In this document: positions 42,847 through 56,842 of the stretch, one piece after another
How positions within the stretch are numbered: the first letter of the stretch is position 1
Layout: each line of letters begins with the position of its first letter
Assembly: GCA_048013815.1 (NCBI GenBank)
Contig: CM106585.1
Coordinates: forward strand, 9,486,001-9,550,000
Direction: 5' to 3'
DNA length: 64,000 nucleotides
Origin: Setoptus koraiensis
Taxonomy: Eukaryota; Animalia; Arthropoda
Made by a program: the position numbers and the translations under genes
Notes under the pieces: model-generated
The model's input: only the letters and a program-made list of their open reading frames with translations
The model's database searches: none
What the model was told of the DNA's origin: nothing

Positions 42847-43442
42847 ATGTCCAACTATCACACACTGGTATTCTTTTTATTATCTTGTGGATCCATGTGG
42901 CCACCGTATCGAATATAAGTTTTGCCACTATAGATTCATTTAGGAAGAGGCATTTCTTCAGGTTACCCTGGCGATGCAGAATGTAATAGCCAATGAGATT
43001 GCAAAACCGCTCCAATTAATCATTGATGAACGGAACAAACAATCGAACAATCAGAAAGTGATGATCCAAGGATGCTCATTTCACGTGGAAAACTGTTCAA
43101 TTATATTTTTTGTAAATGACGATCCACCGGTTTCTACCAAAGAAACCTGACACTGTGCTGTTCTCTGTCAAAACTAGCGATCTCGATGAATTCAAACTAC
43201 AAATCAGTAGTTGAATTTATCAATTAATGAATCGGCTGTGCTGTCCATATTCAGCTTTATACACTTACTGAGTTTATTATCCGTCAATCATAAATTCAAA
43301 TTCAGCTAACTACTGAGTTATTGAATGGTATATCATCAGCATGATTTCTGCTTTAGAATTCCGAAGTTTATACCATTCCTTTTAATAAAATTTGGCAGCT
43401 CTTCTGTCCATTGTAATGTACCGTTTTCTGTTCTTTAGAGTT
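42847..43442 (+). pseudogene. Collinear mosaic of decayed fragments of ABCA, TMEM161 and the UROS 3-prime end
   Basis: Matches in order to 47257-47615, 50876-51095 (29-nt identical run 43159-43187 = 50896-50924) and 56632-56760 (26-nt identical run 43319-43344 = 56640-56665). Confidence 0.9.
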
Positions 43443-44349: not shown

Positions 44350-47300
44350 ATGGCTTCGGATCAGTGCAACTCAAGCAAAGTCGCCAATCCTGATACAAAT
44401 GTATTCTGGTCACAATACAAGATACTATTGTGGAAATTGATTGTCACAGCAAAACGATCCTACCAAAAAACCTTATTCAGTGCACTGAGCCCTCTGGCTG
44501 TGATTCTATGTTTCCGATGGACATTCTACAATCCGCTAGAGCCGCCAAACACTTGTTACACAATGGTGGTGATACCCCCATTTATAACTTTGGACATTTT
44601 CACTTCATTTGGTTATTTACTTCACATTAGTATGATTGTGAGCCGACTGGCCGGGGAGCACTATCATCAACAACAAACACTGCTATTTGTGATGGGCTCC
44701 AAGAGATCTGCCTACTATTTGGCAAATATTTCATTCGATTTAGTTCACACAACATTATTGGCACTCTACATGGCTGTTGGATTGCGCTACATAATATTGA
44801 TTTGTTCTTCGTTGAGCCTCATTGTGCTCACTTACCTGTTGCACGGAATTCAATCAGTAGCCTTCTCCTATTTTCTTAGTATGTTCAGGTGCAAAAGAGG
44901 CGATTCACCTACGCAACCATCAACATTGATCACATTGAGCATACTTATCTGGTTCATCAGCAAAACGATAAGAGTGGCTGCCGAGTTTGAATTGGGTGTA
45001 CCAAGCGACGATTGGGTGCATGTAGTAAGCTTCATTAATTGCATGCTACCCCAGACTGCACTGTTTCAAATTAATCCAGCTATAGTAGGTAATCCTGACC
45101 TATCACTGGCAAAAGTATTTCGGCTTACCCACCGACGCTCTCTACCGGTAGGTTATATTTGGCTATCGATGATATTCTCATCTGTTTTCTTCATAATGGG
45201 CTCTTGGTACTCAATTCTTAGTTCTGGAGTTGGCTCCAATGTACACGATTGCGCCTTACGCCAATGTACAACTAAGATAGGCCGATGCCTGAAGAAGACA
45301 TTTGCCTCGATTTGTTCGTTCTGCTCTTCTACGGAGCCAACACTGGACCCTGGCAGGGTGGAAAGTGATGGATCTTCAGCAGAGAGAGGAGTTAGAGATT
45401 TACTTGAAATATTTCACTCGGGATGCCTACAAGAGCCCGAACCCATCGGACAATTGGAGCCAGGTATAACAATCAGGGGAGTAACAAAATATTATGACAG
45501 AACAGAGCCGCCTGTTGTCGACAATTTGTCACTGACCGTTTACAAAGGCCAGACTACTATCTTGTTGGGACACAATGGTGCGGGCAAGACAACTCTCATG
45601 AAAATGATAATTGGCTTGCTGGATTTTGATGAAGGCTCGGTAACAATATCAGGTGGTCACAGTATCCAGAGTCAGCGTCAATTGGCGCGTCTATCGCTAG
45701 GATACTGTCCTCAGATGAGTATCACCTTCGATAACATGACTGTAGAAGAGCATCTGAGACTGTTCTGTGGCATAAAAGGTATCACAGAATCTGAGCTGAT
45801 CAAAACAACATGCCAATCTGTATTAGCTGGGGTTAAACTGAGCGAAAAGAGTGACAATTTAGTTAGCGAACTCTCAGGTGGGATGGTGCGAAAATTGAGC
45901 TTGGCCATCGCTCTGATAGGCAGAAAACAACAGGTTCTTGTATTAGACGAACCGAGCTCTGGTTTAGATCCAGAATCGCGCGAATCTATTTGGCAAATTG
46001 TTCAGCATTATGGCCAACAAAGGGCAATATTGATCACTACCCAGCACATGGAGGAAGCAGATAACCTTGGGGATCGTATAGCTATAATGTCACGCGGAAA
46101 AATTGTTTGTTCGGGATCAGGTGTGTTTCTCAAGGAACGATTCGGAAGTGGTTACGTTGTTCGTTTAGGGCTCAAAGATGACATTAAAAAAGAGACTCGG
46201 GAGAAAATTTTAGGATTCATGAGAGAGGCTCTGGCTAGTTCATCGCGATACCAACAGATCAACAACAGAGACGAGGAGTTGAGACAAAAATTACACACCA
46301 TAGTCAAACAGATTACTCTGAGAGACACTGGCCTCGTAACGACAGGTGATGGACTTGAAAATTCATCGTTGAATGATGACACTCTTGACATGATCTTGCC
46401 AATTGAAGCTCTCGAAAAGCTGGAGAACAGTGAGTTACTTGCCGGGATTGATTATGAGGGTTTCTTCAAACAACTCGAGAAGAATCAGGTCACTTTGGGA
46501 ATTGAATCGTTTGGAATCACCAGCTCATCTATGGAGGATGTTTTTAACAATATAAGCTCTATGGCCAATAAATTGCCTGCTAATTACAATATAGATGAAA
46601 GCAGACGAGCGAGGGCTTCTCAGAAGAGCAACAGAGAATCTTTGAAGAAGGACTTGAATTTCAGCATGGAGCATTACCGGTATAAAGATAGTGATAGAGA
46701 CAGATCAAGTGTTAATTGGAAACACATCAAAGCCACAATCTTAAGGCATTTGATTATTTTGAGAAACACTTGGCAATCATATCTGGCAATGAGATTCTTC
46801 TATTTCGTATTGGTCTACATGTTGGTTGTGGTGCTAACCCGCGTCCGAGTTAGACCACATCCAATATTGCGCAAGAAGATAGTCACTTACACTATATACA
46901 CCTGTGTTCCGTTTATTTTGCCCTTCATGGTGTCGCATTATGTTCAATTGTCCAACAAAGACAAAAGGCAAGACGGAAGCAAATTTATACAACATATGAT
47001 GGGACTGCACCCCGCAATCTACTGGTCGGTGCAATATTTTTACGACTCTTTCAGCATGATACTCAATGGACTAATACTTGTTGTAACGATATGGTTCTTC
47101 GATTTTACGGAACCATTTTTTGATATTGACTTCACGTCGAGCATCAACATTTGGCTCTCATTTGCTATTCTAGTTATGCTATTCTCATCTGGTTCCGCCC
47201 TTCTCAGTTACTCAATATCTGGATATTTTTCAACGCCATCTGGGGCAGTTATGGCTATGTCCATCTATCACACATTGGCATTCTTTTTGTCTTGTGGAGC

Positions 47301-49026
47301 CATTTTGTTTCAGCAACAAGGACATAGAACTTACAACAATTATCTTCGTGTGACGACCCTATTAAATCCAGGTTTTGCCATCACGGATGCTTTTAGAAAG
47401 CTATACGACTCCGCCACTGTGTACAAGGGCGAAGATCTCTCGAGCTACACTGGCTCAATAGAAAATGAAATAGCCAATGAGATTGCGAAACCGTTTCAAT
47501 TCATATTCGACAGACAAAACAAACTAATTGAACAATCAGAAAGTGATGATCCTGACGATTACATTCCCGCTGACAAGGATGTTCAGTTCAGAGGAAAACT
47601 GTTCAGCTATAATATTCAAAATGGACTCTGGATAAATGCTACCAGCTTGGTTTTGTACAATTTGTTTGCATTAACGCTGCTAGTAATGGATGAACATGGC
47701 TACAATCTGCTTGGCAATTGGCTGGGAAATATCAAGAAAGTTCTTCATTGCAATAGCAACTCAGTCAATCGCAAAAACCAAACAGTCTCACACTCCGCGA
47801 CAATCCCAATGCAAAGGTTATCTATTTCAGTGGACAACAGTGTACACGTAGAGAAGTTGAGGGCACACACTTTGATCTATCAACAAAATAAACATCAGGA
47901 TCGCTCGGCGGCCTTGGTGGTGTCAGAGTTAAGTAAATCTTTTAAGGAATTTGTAGCTGTTGATGGTCTCTCGATGGTACTCAATCAAAGCGAATGTTTC
48001 GGACTATTAGGCATCAATGGAGCAGGAAAAACAACCAGCTTCTCTATGATCTGTACCAAAGTGAGAAAAGACGGGGGTCAAATGGAATGTTTCACTTTTG
48101 ACTCAGTCGATCAATTGAAATTATATCGCAAGCAGATTGGCTATGATCCACAATCTAGCACAAGATTTTACGATCTCACCTGTTGGCAAACATTGTATCA
48201 TGTTGCGTTGTTGCGTGGAATGAAAGAGGAAAAAATTGAAGAGGCCATAGAGGCGCTGCTGACCTCGTTTGATATGAAGATACACACAAACAAACGTATG
48301 GATCAATTGTCTGGCGGTACCCAAAGAAAGCTCAGTTTGGCTATAGCAATGATTTGTACACCACCTGTTTTGATATTGGACGAACCAACTGCTGGCATTG
48401 ATCCTCTGTCGAGAAGATCCATTTGGCATTGTATCACCAAATGTAAAAAGTTACACAATTGCTCTATAGTAATATCATCGCATGCTATGGAGGAATGCGA
48501 AGCAATTTGTGATAGAATTGGTTTGATGGCTAGAGGGAAACTTCACTCAGTAGGTTCGTTCCAGCAACTGAGGAAGAAGTATAGCCAAGGCTATGTAATA
48601 CGTGTACAATTCACCAATCAAAACTACAATCTTGTTGTGGGTCCGCGCGAACATTTTGACTCGGTCTTGACGATCGGCGACCGGAACCAATCATATCTAG
48701 CAAGTAATCAATCAAGAAGGTCGTTAGGACAAGTTGACACAAAGAGATCACTCGATATCGCGGAGAGCAAGGCTGAGCTAACGAAATATCTTGAGTCAAT
48801 TACGAATGATATACAAATTGATTACACTAATGTAAACTCAATTGTATACAGGGTAAACGATCCCAATATAAATAGATCTACTCTATTCAATTGGATGGAG
48901 AGTGCCAAATCAAAATTAAAAGGCGTTAATTTTTCTTATCTTCTAAGTGATACAAGTTTGGAGGATGTATTTCTAACATTTGCCAAAGGTGTTGACGGAA
49001 AGTCCCATCAGTCGAGATTATCATGA
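44350..49026 (+). CDS. ABCA-subfamily full transporter, intronless, 1558 aa
   Basis: TMD-NBD-TMD-NBD layout. NBD1 has GHNGAGKT, LGYCPQ, LSGGMVRKL, LDEP. NBD2 has GINGAGKT, LSGGTQRKL, LDEPTAGIDP, SSHAMEECE. SLEDVF regulatory motif. Confidence 0.95.
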   Translation: MASDQCNSSKVANPDTNVFWSQYKILLWKLIVTAKRSYQKTLFSALSPLAVILCFRWTFYNPLEPPNTCYTMVVIPPFITLDIFTSFGYLLHISMIVSRLAGEHYHQQQTLLFVMGSKRSAYYLANISFDLVHTTLLALYMAVGLRYIILICSSLSLIVLTYLLHGIQSVAFSYFLSMFRCKRGDSPTQPSTLITLSILIWFISKTIRVAAEFELGVPSDDWVHVVSFINCMLPQTALFQINPAIVGNPDLSLAKVFRLTHRRSLPVGYIWLSMIFSSVFFIMGSWYSILSSGVGSNVHDCALRQCTTKIGRCLKKTFASICSFCSSTEPTLDPGRVESDGSSAERGVRDLLEIFHSGCLQEPEPIGQLEPGITIRGVTKYYDRTEPPVVDNLSLTVYKGQTTILLGHNGAGKTTLMKMIIGLLDFDEGSVTISGGHSIQSQRQLARLSLGYCPQMSITFDNMTVEEHLRLFCGIKGITESELIKTTCQSVLAGVKLSEKSDNLVSELSGGMVRKLSLAIALIGRKQQVLVLDEPSSGLDPESRESIWQIVQHYGQQRAILITTQHMEEADNLGDRIAIMSRGKIVCSGSGVFLKERFGSGYVVRLGLKDDIKKETREKILGFMREALASSSRYQQINNRDEELRQKLHTIVKQITLRDTGLVTTGDGLENSSLNDDTLDMILPIEALEKLENSELLAGIDYEGFFKQLEKNQVTLGIESFGITSSSMEDVFNNISSMANKLPANYNIDESRRARASQKSNRESLKKDLNFSMEHYRYKDSDRDRSSVNWKHIKATILRHLIILRNTWQSYLAMRFFYFVLVYMLVVVLTRVRVRPHPILRKKIVTYTIYTCVPFILPFMVSHYVQLSNKDKRQDGSKFIQHMMGLHPAIYWSVQYFYDSFSMILNGLILVVTIWFFDFTEPFFDIDFTSSINIWLSFAILVMLFSSGSALLSYSISGYFSTPSGAVMAMSIYHTLAFFLSCGAILFQQQGHRTYNNYLRVTTLLNPGFAITDAFRKLYDSATVYKGEDLSSYTGSIENEIANEIAKPFQFIFDRQNKLIEQSESDDPDDYIPADKDVQFRGKLFSYNIQNGLWINATSLVLYNLFALTLLVMDEHGYNLLGNWLGNIKKVLHCNSNSVNRKNQTVSHSATIPMQRLSISVDNSVHVEKLRAHTLIYQQNKHQDRSAALVVSELSKSFKEFVAVDGLSMVLNQSECFGLLGINGAGKTTSFSMICTKVRKDGGQMECFTFDSVDQLKLYRKQIGYDPQSSTRFYDLTCWQTLYHVALLRGMKEEKIEEAIEALLTSFDMKIHTNKRMDQLSGGTQRKLSLAIAMICTPPVLILDEPTAGIDPLSRRSIWHCITKCKKLHNCSIVISSHAMEECEAICDRIGLMARGKLHSVGSFQQLRKKYSQGYVIRVQFTNQNYNLVVGPREHFDSVLTIGDRNQSYLASNQSRRSLGQVDTKRSLDIAESKAELTKYLESITNDIQIDYTNVNSIVYRVNDPNINRSTLFNWMESAKSKLKGVNFSYLLSDTSLEDVFLTFAKGVDGKSHQSRLS

Positions 49027-49160: not shown

Positions 49161-50130
49161 TCATTTGTGACTAATATCTGCCTCTTTTGGTGTCCACCCT
49201 ATAAAGTGTAAAATCTGAAAAGTAGCTGGTATGCCGTTGCTGATATTATCTTCATCACCAAATCTTTGCTGATAAATTGCTGCAGCGGATAGAAGAGAGT
49301 CTCTGTTTAAGTGAATACAGTTATTTACAATGGCACCATTCTCGCCCATCCCTTGTAGATCAAATAACAATTCAAAAATGGAGGGGTAGCAGATGACGAG
49401 TTCGTCCACGTCGGCCGTGATCAGTTTGAAATTGCTGGAACCAAGTAACCCAACTAGATCTCGACCAGTTGTCATGGGAGATACGTGCGGTGAAAATCCC
49501 GACAATCTTTCTTGCTCGGCCATTTGTAGCGATGATCTCAGTTCGAAAAGTGTATCGCCGCCAAAGATGGCCCCTATGAATGCAGAGTCAGGCTTGAGGC
49601 ATTTGTTGACCTAAAGAACAAGATGAAGGTGTTAGCCCGAGCGTTTCATGGCGTTTCAGTTAATGCATTTGTCGAGGAAATCTTCTTGAACTACTTACTT
49701 TCTTGAAACAGGACGGAAGATCATTGACCCAATGTAAGGACAGATTACTAACAGCAAGGTCAAATTGTTTTTCTGCCAGGTCCACAGTTTCTTCATCGCC
49801 CTGAACATAGCTTATTGGAAATCCCTTAGCTAGCACGGAATTAGAGAGCTTGGATCGTTTGAGAAAATTAGACGAGGAATCATATTCCAGTAAAGACTCG
49901 ACTCGACTTGCATCAAGGTGCTTCGCCACCAAGCCACATGATGATCCCAAATCCAGAATGGACCATTTTTTACCATTGTTTTTCAGGTCTTTCACGCGAT
50001 CGCACACATCTCTAGCCACGTGGTCCCTGACATAATCATATATGTGAGCATCCTTGGCAAGGGCTATCCTATCTCGTTGCAAAAGCTTAACGTTTCTGTT
50101 GAACACCTTGAGAGGCTGTGCTATTTTCAT
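49161..50130 (-). CDS. NDUFAF5: Arginine-hydroxylase NDUFAF5 (SAM-dependent methyltransferase fold); intron 49611-49698
   Basis: VFNRNVKLLQRDR, LDLGSS, FDLAVSNLSLHWVNDLP, GFSPHVSP, LQGMGE, PATFQILHFIGW. The 5-prime end (presequence) is uncertain; the frame is open to 50286. Confidence 0.92.
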
Positions 50131-50546: not shown

Positions 50547-52199
50547 ATGCCTCTATTGGGCTCATCCATCTATCAGCTCCTATTAGCTTTTGTATCTGCT
50601 AGCATTTTGCACAAGTTAACCTATGATTACGCATTTTTGAAATGGCTCTCGTCCCGCAAGTAAGTATTCCTGATCGCAACACTAACCACAATATTAGCCA
50701 ATCAAAGTAAAGATATAAATTATTAATTATCTTTCCACATAAAATCTATATAAACATCCAGACTGGTCTGCTATCTCAGCCCATCAGACAGCGAACTCAA
50801 GAGTCTACAATCAAAAGTTCCCAAGGCAGACCACAACAACTGGAGCGGTAGTAAAAAGCGCCATAAGAAACACAACAAGGAACCCGACACGAAAGTGTTC
50901 TCTGTCAAAACTAGCGATCTCGATAAACTCAAACTTCAAACGACATCAATCAAATCAAAAGATTTGGAATTGTTGCCATGCTCCTTGGAGCTGGAATGGA
51001 TAGTCGATTTAGCTGTAATGTCTATATTCAGCTATGTACTTACTGAGATACAGTTTTATTATTATCCGCCGTCAACCAATCAGTACAACTTTAGCCTCTT
51101 TTGGGCAGCATTAGTCATCATATGTAGCATCAGAACTTTAAGCAAATTTACGTGGCTCTATTTCAGAATGCAGGAGCTAATAGGCGAGAGGTCCGTATGT
51201 ATCATATCAGCTTGCTTATTTTTACTCATATCGATGGTGCTGTTGATAGTAGATGAAAGCAAATTAGAATTTGGAATTGAGACTGCTTACAGGTCATTCA
51301 ACTCGTCGGCCTCACGATACGTCATGAATCATGAATACTTGTCGAAACCGGTCTCATTAATCATGATTAAGTTTACTCTGGCATTGTGTTGTACAATTCT
51401 GGGAGCATTGTTTACATTTCCCGGACTACGTTTTGGTCAGATGCAAGGAGGTCTTATAGAGTCGCACGAGAGAACACCGGTGACTCTATTTGTGTATCAT
51501 GCTAACTATCTCAACTCCCTTATCATTTTGATGCTCTGGATAAAACCATTGACCCGAGACCTTCTGACCAATCCCAATCGAGCATCATATATACTAAGCG
51601 ACGAAAACTTTGACACTTTCAGAATATACTATATGATATTCGCGTGCTTATTTAGGTTCTTTTTATTACCCAGTTATTTGAATACTTATCTGAAGTTGGT
51701 GGAATCGAAAATAACAACAATGAAGCGATCAAAAGACACCATGCCAAACACTTCGATTCAAGAGATGATAGCACAGATTTACTCATACATCAATATCGTT
51801 GCCATCCAATATACACTTCCTGTTTTCATGTGCCTGTTCTCTGCTATCATGTTTAAAAATTTGGGAGGTTATTCATGGTTTTTCCAACAATCTCATCGGA
51901 CGAATCACACTTTAGTGGCCAATAATTTTAGCGTGACTTACGACAGAGGCTCTCTGAATCATGGTGGTGACAGTCTCGTAGGGCCAGGGGGCAGTGATCC
52001 TGAGACTCTAACATTAAGTGAGGGTAGCAGTTTTTTCGGCCACGACCTAGCAGTCGATTTCAATGATTTTAAGAGCATATTTTCGCCCGAAGTATTTCGT
52101 GGACTGTTGGGCTTTTGTAATTGGTGGTTACATTTTGTTTGGTTTTGTACCAGCTCGATAGGTCTAGTGTATCACACAAAATTTTCTGCTAGTGCATAA
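50547..52199 (+). CDS. TMEM161: Transmembrane protein 161 family; intron 50660-50761
   Basis: Exon 1 MPLLGSSIYQLLLAFVSASILHKL splices to KLVCYLSPSDSELK; LEWIVDLAV, GERSVCI, FTFPGLRFGQM, AIQY, WWLHFVWFCTS. Confidence 0.9.
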
Positions 52200-55744: not shown

Positions 55745-56665
55745 ATGCAGACAGACACTAGGAAATCAAAATGGATCCATCTATTATTTCGTGGTGATAA
55801 AGATGATTTTATAGGACTAAATTCTCCAGAAGATGATTATACAAGAGAATTCATCTCAATCAATCATTTGTCTTTGACAATACCGTTGTTGGAATTCAAA
55901 TATATAAATCTATTGGAGTTGTACCAACTACTGGCGAAGCAAATAAGTGACAAATCATACAAATATGGACTTATATTGACTTCACCTAGAGTTGTTGAGG
56001 CTGTCAATCAGTCGTTAAATAAATTTAGTCATCTTGGGACAAGAGAAAAAATTGTTGCCGCATGGAAAACCAATGAGTCTCAGCATATATATTCTGTGGG
56101 AGAGAAAACAAGTCAAACAGCTGAAAGGGTTCTCGGAATCAAAGTCAGTAATGGATCCTCTGCAACTGGTCGCGGTTCAGAGTTAGCCAAATTTATAATC
56201 GAGGCTGTATCACCTGAGGAGTGTGATAATCTCGTTCTCATACAACCGCACGGAGATTTAGCTGACGGCACTCTCTCTCAATCTATCAAGACCCACGGAA
56301 TAAAAGTAAATTCGTTGGTTGTTTATAACAATGAACCAATACCTGAGATCCAAGATTACTTGAAGAAAGTTTTGTCGGAATTTTTGTTATCCCTTGACAA
56401 ACAATCAACCTCAATAGTACCCCTTGGTATCAACTTGATATTTTTTAGTCCATCGGGAGTGAAGTTGCTATTTCCGCATGTCAATTGGATCTTGGGGGAG
56501 CTAGAATCTTTCTTCAAAAGTGATCTTAACGTAGTGAACTCATGTATCGGACCAACGACCAGGAAGGCAATGTTAGACATAGGAATGGAAGTGTTTTGTA
56601 CATCTAGCAAGCCAAATGCTCAAACACTGATTGCTGAGATATTGAATGGTATATCATCAGCATGA
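55745..56665 (+). CDS. UROS: Uroporphyrinogen-III synthase (HemD/HEM4)
   Basis: GLILTSPRVVEA, YSVGEKT, SLVVY, IFFSPSGVK, CIGPTT, SKPNAQ. Confidence 0.9.
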   Translation: MQTDTRKSKWIHLLFRGDKDDFIGLNSPEDDYTREFISINHLSLTIPLLEFKYINLLELYQLLAKQISDKSYKYGLILTSPRVVEAVNQSLNKFSHLGTREKIVAAWKTNESQHIYSVGEKTSQTAERVLGIKVSNGSSATGRGSELAKFIIEAVSPEECDNLVLIQPHGDLADGTLSQSIKTHGIKVNSLVVYNNEPIPEIQDYLKKVLSEFLLSLDKQSTSIVPLGINLIFFSPSGVKLLFPHVNWILGELESFFKSDLNVVNSCIGPTTRKAMLDIGMEVFCTSSKPNAQTLIAEILNGISSA

Positions 56666-56842
56666 CTCTTGGTTTTATATTCTTCGTATTTAACACCACT
56701 ATTTGAAATAAACCTGACGTTTGTACTGTAGTAATTTCGTCGTTTTTCATCTTTTAGAGTTGGTAGAATATATAGAGAGTCTAGTATAAGTACTGGTATA
56801 TATGTCATTCACTTCTACAGTATCTAGTACAGTGAAAGATTT

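What the first reader, a model, noticed from the sequence alone, without database searches (positions are those of the whole stretch)
44350..49026. ABCA transporter lacking both large extracellular domains, with an asymmetric NBD1 (switch His to Gln)
Seen: only about 10-15 residues separate TM1 from TM2 in each half (..RWTFY-NPLEPPNTC-YTMVV.. and ..VVVLT-RVRVRPHPILRKK-IVTY..). The NBD1 H-loop reads TTQHMEEA, whereas NBD2 keeps SSHAMEE. The ORF is intact for 4.7 kb with no introns. Known: ABCA proteins are defined by large glycosylated ECD1/ECD2 domains (roughly 150-600 aa) that form the lipid-delivery conduit, and the canonical H-loop is [ST]H-x-M-[DE]E. Inference: a natural minimal ABCA that may be a flippase or xenobiotic exporter with no acceptor-docking domain and one weak ATPase site.
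Basis: partly seen in the sequence, partly recalled or inferred. Interest (0 to 1): 0.7.

Follow-up and report, generated by a model that had tools for sequence, protein, structure and literature searches.

The report
ABCA transporter without extracellular domains
This intact, selectively maintained gene encodes a lipid-pump-type (ABCA) transporter that has lost both large outer domains thought to define the family. It belongs to a previously undescribed clade of such stripped-down pumps, all of which also carry the same change at a key catalytic residue in the first ATP-binding domain.

Summary
ORF 44350-49026(+) is an intact, intronless 1558-aa full ABC transporter. Its NBDs match ABCA3/4/1/7 at E~1e-105, and its AlphaFold models align with ABCA cryo-EM structures along their whole length (Z 28-32).

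The TM1-TM2 link is about 10-21 residues and the TM7-TM8 link about 5-14. ABCA3-like relatives have about 210 and 150-250 residues there. Gln565 aligns without gaps with the NBD1 switch histidine; NBD2 keeps His1378. dN/dS against an 86%-identical syntenic orthologue is 0.096, so the gene is functional.

The gene is not unique. This 48.8-Mb genome has at least eight intronless paralogues, some only about 1330-1350 aa, so the window gene is not the minimal one. A search of 1.84 billion representative proteins finds 12 clusters of this kind, none named. All 30 members form one clade, and all carry Gln at the NBD1 switch position (0 of 27 canonical ABCAs do).

Two unrelated ECD-less ABCAs that keep His come from unnamed microbial eukaryotes, so ECD loss is convergent.

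Function (lipid or hydrophobic-substrate translocation, slower ATP site 1) is inferred, not shown. Other first readers flagged three paralogues elsewhere in this genome.

Verdict: new variant of a known kind, moderately interesting.

The parts
44350..49026 (+). Complete intronless gene for a 1558-aa ECD-less ABCA-type full transporter (TMD1-NBD1-RD1-TMD2-NBD2-RD2)
   Evidence: ORF list and translation. Pfam finds 2x ABC_tran plus ABC2_membrane_3. The best PDB matches are ABCA3/4/1/7 at E~1e-105. dN/dS is 0.096 against the syntenic orthologue L001.
44461..44526 (+). TM1 (residues 38-59), preceded by the N-terminal amphipathic helix carrying the LLWKL remnant of the ABCA xLxxKN motif (44425-44442)
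   Evidence: AF2 helix 38-59; hydropathy 41-60; aligns with TM1 of canonical ABCAs.
44527..44589 (+). Short TM1-TM2 link (residues 60-80) in place of ECD1. About 185-190 residues are missing relative to ABCA3-like proteins.
   Evidence: MAFFT gap; hydropathy; AF2 non-helical, low-pLDDT stretch 60-80. Identical in orthologue P0001.
44590..45225 (+). TM2-TM6 of TMD1, including the post-TM2 'MG' motif and the re-entrant helices 220-247
   Evidence: AF2 helices 81-105, 119-149, 155-177, 190-213, 220-230, 234-247 and 267-291. Pfam ABC2_membrane_3 profile positions 167-343.
45445..46164 (+). NBD1 (residues 366-605): Walker A GHNGAGKTT, Q-loop CPQ, signature LSGGM, Walker B LDEPSS with Glu534
   Evidence: Pfam ABC_tran; ungapped alignment to ABCA3/ABCA4 NBD1; motif coordinates.
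46042..46044 (+). Codon CAG = Gln565 at the NBD1 switch (H-loop) position
   Evidence: Aligns with the switch His of ABCA3/4. Gln in 28/28 and then 30/30 clade members against His in 27/27 canonical ABCAs.
46153..46572 (+). Regulatory domain 1 (residues about 602-741), followed by a long poorly ordered linker up to residue about 783
   Evidence: AF2 beta-alpha-beta...alpha-beta-alpha elements. The conserved 'LGIESFGITSSSMEDVF' motif downstream of NBD1 is present. VIA alignment to ABCA4 starts at residue 1153.
46771..46935 (+). TM7 (808-832), a 5-residue turn (833-837) within a basic 14-residue stretch TRVRVRPHPILRKK, and TM8 (838-862). This replaces ECD2.
   Evidence: AF2; hydropathy; MAFFT gap of about 120-210 residues; coordinates.
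46936..47748 (+). TM8-TM12 remainder of TMD2, including a 105-residue TM11-TM12 exofacial segment (988-1092)
   Evidence: AF2. Pfam ABC2_membrane_3. The loop has the same length as in canonical ABCA3-likes but is trimmed to about 60 aa in the shortest paralogues. dN/dS 0.036.
47905..48624 (+). NBD2 (residues 1186-1425): canonical Walker A/B, signature LSGGT and switch His1378 (48481-48483). The Q-loop reads GYDPQ, with clade-specific Asp1266 in place of Cys.
48592..49023 (+). Regulatory domain 2 (residues about 1415-1558), with a disordered insert of about 32 residues (1428-1459)
   Evidence: AF2 beta-alpha-beta-beta-alpha-beta at pLDDT about 90. The VIA alignment runs to ABCA4 residue 2252 and ABCA3 residue 1695. 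The Pfam R1_ABCA1 HMM does not detect it.

Best explanation
SHOWN
- The gene encodes a functional, ABCA-derived full transporter.
- It keeps the ABCA core: a type-V transmembrane fold, ABCA-type NBDs and both cytoplasmic regulatory domains.
- It has lost both extracellular domains.
- It belongs to a lineage-specific clade that descends from ECD-bearing ABCA3-like ancestors.
- Every member of that clade has Gln in place of the switch His in NBD1. Every member also has Asp in place of Cys before the Q-loop Gln of NBD2.

INFERRED
- It works as an ATP-driven translocator of membrane lipids or other hydrophobic molecules.
- Substrate would enter laterally between TMD1 and TMD2, as in ABCA1/3/4/7. 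It would then be released directly into the outer (or luminal) leaflet or the medium, because there is no ECD tunnel or acceptor-docking platform.
- The two composite ATP sites would be functionally unequal.
  - Site 2 (NBD2 Walker A/B and His1378 plus the NBD1 signature) is fully canonical and probably does most of the hydrolysis.
  - Site 1 (NBD1 Walker A/B and Gln565 plus the NBD2 signature) still binds ATP and keeps its catalytic Glu534, but probably turns over more slowly.
- For this particular paralogue, an endogenous-lipid (housekeeping) role is more likely than a detoxification role. It has a one-to-one syntenic orthologue and is under strong constraint.
For: ABCA descent:
- phmmer against the PDB gives ABCA3/4/1/7 at about 1e-105; the next class (ABCB) scores 1e-34.
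- The top 22 Foldseek hits are all ABCA structures.
- VIA aligns model residues 16-1123 to ABCA3 1-1331 (Z 28.1, 835 aligned). It aligns residues 600-1548 to ABCA4 1153-2252 (Z 31.6, 691 aligned).

ECD loss.

Functional gene:
- dN/dS is 0.096 at dS 0.80, with 0.04-0.065 in the TMDs and NBDs.
- Synteny with L001 is conserved: a 120-aa ORF, a methyltransferase and TMEM161 follow in the same order.

Clade:
- At least 8 intronless paralogues carry [ST]TQHMEEA.
- The NBD tree gives a Q clade of 28, then 30, rows at SH-aLRT 100.
- 12 representative clusters match the TMD1 profile end to end from residue about 1-19 at 305-514 bits. Scores then drop to 202 bits or less, for ECD-bearing ABCAs whose match starts at TM2.

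Site asymmetry:
- Q565 aligns with the switch His.
- H-to-Q is 28/28 against 0/27.
- All other catalytic motifs are intact.

Mechanism by analogy: the ABCA lateral-access, type-V 'engine' is conserved while the ECDs diverge (review PMC13161189).
Against: - There is no direct evidence for any substrate, transport direction, ATPase rate, localisation or even transcription. No RNA run was on record.
- His-to-Gln/Asn at the MRP1 NBD2 H-loop is reported to keep wild-type-like transport (PMC7756269). Gln565 may therefore be nearly neutral.
- The sister paralogue L021 and P0051 have lost the switch His in both NBDs (Q and N). That fits poorly with a simple 'one good site, one weak site' picture.
- The TM7-TM8 turn carries six basic residues. 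This is unusual for an exofacial loop.
- Topology rests on hydropathy, alignment and AF2, not on a dedicated topology predictor or an experiment.
- The TM1-TM2 link is modelled with low confidence (pLDDT below 50 at 62-65 and 71-78).
Confidence: 0.6

Rival explanations
1. Same architecture, but the two ATP sites are functionally equivalent. Gln565 is a conservative, hydrogen-bond-competent replacement with little effect on hydrolysis. The clade-wide fixation would then be a neutral founder substitution rather than a mechanistic change.
For: Every other motif of site 1 is canonical: Walker A, Glu534, the Q-loop and the NBD2 signature LSGGT. A review reports that MRP1 NBD2 H-loop Gln/Asn mutants keep wild-type-like transport (PMC7756269).
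Against: The position is His in 27/27 canonical ABCAs sampled and Gln in 30/30 clade members across deep divergence (branch lengths above 1 substitution per site). This argues for constraint on Gln itself. It co-occurs with a second fixed change at the NBD2 Q-loop, Cys to Asp.
Confidence: 0.3
2. The clade members are xenobiotic or plant-metabolite efflux pumps, and the clade expanded under host-plant pressure. On this reading, loss of the ECDs turned a lipid transporter into an ABCG-like drug exporter.
For: At least five short paralogues exist, some in near-tandem on contig 1 at 9.89 and 9.91 Mb. This is the pattern typical of detoxification families. Type-V transporters without large ECDs (ABCG) include drug pumps, and Cdr1/Pdr5 appear among the weaker structural hits.
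Against: The window gene has a one-to-one syntenic orthologue and is under strong purifying selection. No expression or induction data exist. The Aculops genome paper lists only 4 ABCAs and does not single them out (PMC7738191).
Confidence: 0.2
3. The protein is not an active pump. It could instead be a regulator, a lipid sensor or scramblase-like protein, or an ATP-gated channel-like ABC protein.
For: Related paralogues (L021, P0051) lack the switch His in both NBDs. Loss of the ECDs removes the only known acceptor interface.
Against: The full set of catalytic residues in NBD2 and the catalytic Glu in NBD1 are conserved under strong selection, with dN/dS 0.039-0.052 in the NBDs.
Confidence: 0.08
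4. Artefact. Either the ECDs are encoded by missed exons or lost through mis-assembly, or the locus is a decaying retro-copy.
For: There is no RNA evidence. A roughly 550-bp degenerate 'ghost' of this gene and two neighbours lies just upstream. That shows the region has been rearranged.
Against: The reading frame is continuous across both ECD positions, so no exon could be inserted there. The same architecture is found in an independently assembled orthologue, in 7 paralogues and in 12 public clusters. dN/dS is 0.096.
Confidence: 0.02

Closest known systems
Human ABCA3 (PDB 7w01/7w02), and ABCA4, ABCA1 and ABCA7
   Same: Best sequence matches (E~1e-105) and best structural matches (Z 26-32). 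Same domain order, the same type-V TMD fold, ABCA-type NBDs, and RD1 and RD2 after each NBD. The conserved post-TM2/TM8 'MGL' motif is present.
   Different: ECD1 (about 200-600 aa) and ECD2 (about 150-290 aa) are replaced by links of 21 residues or fewer. The NBD1 switch His is Gln. The NBD2 Q-loop Cys is Asp. The Pfam R1_ABCA1 HMM no longer recognises the regulatory domain.
Compact-ECD ABCAs (ABCA5/6/8/9/10 group; ABCA3-like proteins of arthropods such as Tetranychus urticae)
   Same: Similar overall length (about 1500-1700 aa). The clade branches among chelicerate ABCA3-like sequences when the tree is rooted on ABCA1/4/7.
   Different: These proteins still have folded ECDs. Dermauw et al. 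state that all T. urticae ABCAs keep the characteristic extracellular loop in each TMD (PMC3724490). The 2026 review describes shorter, compact ECDs, not their absence (PMC13161189).
ABCG/PDR transporters (type-V fold without large ECDs)
   Same: Same TMD fold class, with only short exofacial loops between the first two helices. Cdr1, Pdr5, ABCG16/25 and ABCG5/G8 appear as weaker structural hits.
   Different: ABCG proteins have the reverse order (NBD before TMD) and no regulatory domains. Their NBDs are far more distant in sequence.
ABC exporters with a non-canonical H-loop in one ATP site (TAP1/ABCB2, CFTR, Pdr5)
   Same: One of two switch histidines is replaced. From memory, TAP1 carries Gln at this position. 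The review notes H-loop deviations in ABCB2/B3 and in several ABCA members (PMC7756269).
   Different: Classical degenerate sites also lose the Walker-B catalytic Glu and/or alter the opposite signature motif. Here Glu534 and LSGGT are intact, so this is at most a mildly degenerate site.
Unnamed ECD-less ABCAs of microbial eukaryotes (P0227, 1309 aa; P0236, 1380 aa)
   Same: Full-size ABCA-type proteins with short TM1-TM2 and TM7-TM8 links, encoded as single ORFs on gene-dense eukaryotic metagenome contigs.
   Different: They keep His in both H-loops. In the NBD tree they group with ECD-bearing relatives (P0231, P0126, P0237), far from this clade. They therefore represent independent ECD losses.

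Membership tests
ABCA subfamily (defined by NBD homology) | Both NBDs are closer to ABCA NBDs than to any other ABC subfamily | tested here: met
   ABCA3/4/1/7 score about 1e-105 against 1e-34 for ABCB. NBD1 alone scores 2e-106 to ABCA3. The NBD tree places the clade with ABCAs.
ABCA subfamily (architecture) | Full transporter TMD1-NBD1-TMD2-NBD2 with non-swapped type-V TMDs | tested here: met
   AF2 models have pTM 0.75 and 0.77. The top 22 Foldseek hits are ABCA structures. VIA gives Z 28-32 over both halves.
ABCA subfamily (architecture) | Large extracellular domain between TM1 and TM2 (ECD1) | tested here: not met
   The link is 10-21 aa, against about 210 aa in ABCA3-like proteins. The TMD1 profile matches clade members in one stretch from the N-terminus.
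ABCA subfamily (architecture) | Large extracellular domain between TM7 and TM8 (ECD2) | tested here: not met
   The link is 5-14 aa, against 150-250 aa.
ABCA subfamily (architecture) | [quoted passage not shown] | tested here: met
   Both domains are folded beta-alpha-beta-beta-alpha-beta modules. The structural alignment runs to the end of ABCA4 and ABCA3 RD2. The motifs '...MEDVF' and '...SLEDVFLTFA' are present. The Pfam R1_ABCA1 HMM is negative.
ABCA subfamily (architecture) | N-terminal xLxxKN motif | tested here: inconclusive
   The sequence reads LLWKLI at residues 26-31. Leu and Lys are kept and Asn is replaced. Most T. urticae ABCAs also deviate from this motif (PMC3724490).
ABC transporters with a degenerate nucleotide-binding site | Loss of the Walker-B catalytic Glu in the degenerate site | tested here: not met
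   LDEPSS with Glu534 is present.
ABC transporters with a degenerate nucleotide-binding site | Altered signature motif contributed by the opposite NBD | tested here: not met
   The NBD2 signature LSGGT is canonical.
ABC transporters with a degenerate nucleotide-binding site | Non-His residue at the H-loop switch position | tested here: met
   Q565 aligns with the switch His, and the change is clade-wide.
ABC transporters with a degenerate nucleotide-binding site | Reduced hydrolysis at that site | not testable with these tools
   This needs ATPase and nucleotide-trapping assays.

The most novel reading that the evidence does not exclude
The clade is a natural 'engine-only' ABCA. It would show that the TMD/NBD/RD core can translocate lipid without any ECD. 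On this reading, the invariant pairing of ECD reduction or loss with NBD1 His-to-Gln and NBD2 Q-loop Cys-to-Asp reflects real allosteric coupling between the extracellular domains and the ATP sites. Once the ECD 'load' was removed, the catalytic cycle was retuned to an obligatorily asymmetric one.
Probability: 0.15. Interest if true: 0.75.

Novelty: new variant of a known kind. Interest (0 to 1): 0.55.

Why it matters
Current structural reviews treat the TM1-ECD1...TM7-ECD2 arrangement as the conserved ABCA plan. They frame ABCA evolution as ECD-driven (PMC13161189). What the ECDs contribute to lipid movement, as opposed to acceptor docking, is still unsettled.

A family of natural, selectively maintained ABCAs that lack both ECDs gives a direct test system: does the core alone flip or extrude lipid, and in which direction? 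These proteins are 1330-1560 aa and intronless, which makes them easier to express and image than the 1700-2300-aa human proteins.

The invariant Gln at the NBD1 switch gives a defined handle on ATP-site asymmetry in a subfamily usually described as having two canonical sites. For mite biology, the clade adds an unannotated, expanded transporter group to a very streamlined genome.

Tried and rejected
- **RNA evidence.** The look-up of sequencing runs returned only DNA or unknown-type holders and no RNA run. Read laying was therefore not used, and expression is untested.
- **Names for relatives.** None of the clade members carries any source name or an NCBI/UniRef accession, so the organisms could not be named. 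I infer an eriophyoid-type mite. The basis is a 48.8-Mb genome in two contigs, near-absence of introns, and best named ABCA hits among chelicerates (PMC7738191). The one eriophyoid assembly I could compare, Aceria tosichella (44.8 Mb, 46% GC), does not match this roughly 40% GC genome.
- **Aculops supplements.** Searching the first 200 of 225 supplementary files of the Aculops genome paper for the QHMEEAD motif found nothing. This is uninformative, because the files may not hold the sequences as text.
- **Literature.** Searches for an ECD-less ABCA found no description. This library is incomplete, so absence of a hit is weak evidence.
- **Pfam regulatory domain.** The R1_ABCA1 HMM did not detect the regulatory domains even at E<=1. 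I rejected 'RDs lost' because the AF2 model and the structural alignment show them.
- **Possible in-frame retained intron.** I considered that residues 296-352, an insert relative to the short paralogues, might be one. I rejected this because the insert is gap-free against the orthologue, with dN/dS 0.22.
- **Not possible.** I could not measure side-chain geometry at Q565/H566 or inspect the TMD cavity.
- **Failed call.** One Pfam call failed on a too-short dummy entry and was repeated.

Full report
**What is at the coordinates**

The window carries one uninterrupted ORF at 44350-49026 on the + strand, 1558 codons long. Pfam finds two ABC_tran domains and ABC2_membrane_3. phmmer against all PDB chains puts ABCA3, ABCA4, ABCA1 and ABCA7 on top at E~1e-105. 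The next class, ABCB, scores 1e-34. The two H-loops read TTQHMEEA (Q565, CAG at 46042-46044) and SSHAMEEC (H1378).

**Are the extracellular domains really missing?**

Three independent lines agree.

- *Hydropathy.* Kyte-Doolittle analysis places TM1 at 41-60, TM2 at 69-97, TM7 at 809-836 and TM8 at 843-862. Five canonical ABCA3-like proteins treated the same way show gaps of about 210 residues between TM1 and TM2, and 150-250 residues between TM7 and TM8.
- *Alignment.* In a MAFFT alignment with canonical ABCAs, the N-terminal helix and TM1 align. The conserved cytoplasmic motif after TM2 and TM8 (EKE..K..M..MGL type) also aligns. ECD1 (about 185-190 aa) and ECD2 (about 120-210 aa) are clean gaps in the window protein. 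Pfam ABC2_membrane_3 matches each TMD only from profile position about 161-167 onward, which is from TM2.
- *Structure prediction.* AlphaFold2 with a 65-sequence alignment gave pLDDT 76.5 and pTM 0.75 for residues 1-1175. For residues 600-1558 it gave pLDDT 77.6 and pTM 0.77. The models show TM1 at 38-59, a non-helical link at 60-80, TM2 at 81-105, TM7 at 808-832, a five-residue turn, and TM8 at 838-862.

VIA-align superposes residues 16-1123 on ABCA3 residues 1-1331 (Z 28.1, 835 aligned). It superposes residues 600-1548 on ABCA4 residues 1153-2252 (Z 31.6, 691 aligned). The ABCA core is therefore complete, including both cytoplasmic regulatory domains. The Pfam R1_ABCA1 HMM does not recognise those domains.

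**The switch residue**

HMMER aligns NBD1 without gaps to NBD1 of ABCA3 and ABCA4. Q565 lies under their switch histidine. In the AF2 models Q565 and H1378 each occupy the first position after the preceding beta-strand (strands 559-564 and 1372-1377). H566 therefore corresponds to A1379, not to the switch position. All other catalytic motifs of both NBDs are canonical, including the Walker-B Glu534.

**Is the gene real and functional?**

- A contig from another sequencing run (L001) carries an 86%-identical, 1548-aa orthologue. It is followed by the same neighbours: a 120-aa ORF, a methyltransferase and TMEM161.
- Nei-Gojobori dN/dS is 0.096 at dS 0.80. Region by region it is 0.065 in TMD1, 0.041 in TMD2, 0.039 in NBD1 and 0.052 in NBD2.
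- The reading frame is continuous across both ECD positions, so a missed exon cannot explain their absence.
- No RNA run was available.

**It is a clade, not a singleton**

The source genome is 48.8 Mb in two contigs. It holds at least seven further intronless genes with the same NBD1 motif [ST]TQHMEEA:

| Paralogue(s) | Length | Notes |
|---|---|---|
| L015 | 1690 aa | 50-58% identical to the window protein |
| L016-L020 | 1326-1354 aa | five short paralogues |
| L021 | 1682 aa | see below |

All except L021 have short TM1-TM2 and TM7-TM8 links. L021 and its relative P0051 keep a reduced ECD1 (about 100 aa) and ECD2 (about 40 aa). They have also replaced the NBD2 switch His, by Asn.

The genome still has a multi-exon canonical ABCA (L022). 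That gene has at least 300 residues before TM2, a TTHHMEE H-loop and a recognisable R1_ABCA1 domain.

Eighteen further short proteins (1305-1416 aa) from Logan, ENA and JGI assemblies share the architecture and the Gln.

A maximum-likelihood tree of the concatenated NBDs recovers all Gln-bearing sequences as one group with SH-aLRT 100. This held with 28 rows and again with 30 rows. If the tree is rooted on the ABCA1/4/7 group, the clade emerges among chelicerate ABCA3-like proteins. That makes ECD loss the derived state.

Column by column, the sharpest clade-defining NBD changes are:

- His565 to Gln: 28/28 in the clade, against His in 27/27 canonical ABCAs.
- The Cys before the NBD2 Q-loop Gln, changed to Asp: 28/28 against Cys in 27/27.

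**How widespread is ECD loss?**

I built a profile of TMD1 plus Walker A from 24 clade members. I searched it against 1.84 billion representative proteins.

- Twelve clusters match the whole profile in one stretch starting at protein residue 1-19, at 305-514 bits.
- Scores then fall to 202 bits or less. Those hits are ECD-bearing ABCAs whose match starts at TM2 (profile position about 55-67, protein residue 150-400 or beyond).
- Two lower hits, P0227 (1309 aa) and P0236 (1380 aa), are also full-size ABCAs with short links. Both keep His in both H-loops. Both lie on gene-dense contigs of unnamed microbial eukaryotes. In the NBD tree they group with ECD-bearing relatives, away from this clade.

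ECD loss has therefore happened at least three times. Its combination with the Gln switch is confined to this clade. None of these proteins carries a name or an NCBI/UniRef accession.

**Comparison with what is described**

[quoted passage not shown] They state that all T. urticae ABCAs have it (PMC3724490).
- A 2026 structural review calls TM1-ECD1-TM2-6-NBD1-RD1-TM7-ECD2-TM8-12-NBD2-RD2 the conserved arrangement. It ranks human ABCAs by ECD size and describes none without ECDs (PMC13161189).
- The Aculops lycopersici genome paper counts four ABCAs and says nothing about their architecture (PMC7738191).
- My literature searches found no description of an ECD-less ABCA. The library is incomplete, so this is weak evidence.

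**Mechanism**

*Shown:* ABCA descent, a complete cytoplasmic and membrane core, absence of both ECDs, a fixed Gln at the NBD1 switch, and purifying selection.

*Inferred:* the protein uses the conserved ABCA lateral-access engine to move a lipid or other hydrophobic molecule. With no ECD tunnel or docking platform, it would release the substrate directly into the outer or luminal leaflet or into the medium.

*Also inferred:* ATP site 2 is fully canonical and probably carries most hydrolysis. Site 1 keeps Glu534 but has Gln565 and probably turns over more slowly.

*Caveats:*

- Gln or Asn at the MRP1 NBD2 H-loop is reported to preserve transport (PMC7756269).
- The L021 lineage lacks His in both sites.
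- The TM7-TM8 turn (TRVRVRPHPILRKK) is unusually basic for an exofacial loop.
- The TM1-TM2 link is modelled with low confidence.

For this paralogue, one-to-one synteny and tight constraint favour an endogenous-lipid role. The tandemly expanded short paralogues could equally be efflux pumps.

**Verdict**

It overstates uniqueness ('minimal') and goes beyond the evidence on ATPase weakness and substrate.

By descent the protein is an ABCA. It fails the architectural hallmark of the family, so I file it as a new ECD-less variant of a known kind.

Three other first-stage notes in this genome flag paralogues (L016, L015 and L020 by position) with the same reading. I checked those genes here.

Noticed in passing
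window 42847-43389: A roughly 550-bp collinear 'ghost' sits just upstream of the gene. Short stretches are 76-85% identical to 47257-47611 (the ABCA TM11-TM12 loop), to 50877-51047 (the start of TMEM161) and to 56634-56712 (the end of the UROS gene). They are joined as if by large deletions of a duplicated 9.5-kb segment. The ORF at 42974-43150 still reads like ABCA residues about 1045-1075.
   Followed up: partly
window 46840-46881 (residues 830-843): The TM7-TM8 turn TRVRVRPHPILRKK has six Arg/Lys in 14 residues. It is identical in the orthologue P0001 but not basic in the short paralogues. This is odd for a loop predicted to face outward. It could bind anionic lipid head-groups, or it could signal an unexpected local topology.
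   Followed up: partly
L021:4471-9516(-) (G000 contig 2, about 23.70 Mb) and P0051: A sister lineage of the clade keeps reduced ECDs (about 100 aa and about 40 aa). It has replaced the switch His in both NBDs: STQHMEEA in NBD1 and ASNAMEEC in NBD2. It may be an evolutionary intermediate, and it is a transporter with no canonical H-loop at all.
   Followed up: partly
window 48145-48147 (Asp1266): The residue two positions before the NBD2 Q-loop Gln is Asp in all 28 clade members and Cys in all 27 canonical ABCAs compared (GYDPQ against GYCPQ). It is a second fixed, unexplained change near an ATP site.
   Followed up: no
L027:4001-7930 (P0227); L029:4001-8143 (P0236): Two unrelated full-size ABCAs (1309 and 1380 aa) also lack both ECDs but keep canonical His switches. 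They sit on gene-dense metagenome contigs of unnamed microbial eukaryotes and represent independent ECD losses.
   Followed up: partly
L023:3-9998 (G000 contig 1, 13.685-13.695 Mb): An open frame of more than 3300 aa with no Pfam hit lies upstream of an ABCA-like NBD match at contig 1 13,696,282 (open frame 5136 aa). It may be a giant ABCA12/13-like gene encoded almost without introns.
   Followed up: no
window 49161-49523(-): A 120-aa ORF with no Pfam match is conserved in position (120 aa, same strand relation) next to the orthologous ABCA gene in L001. It is likely a real small gene of unknown function.
   Followed up: no
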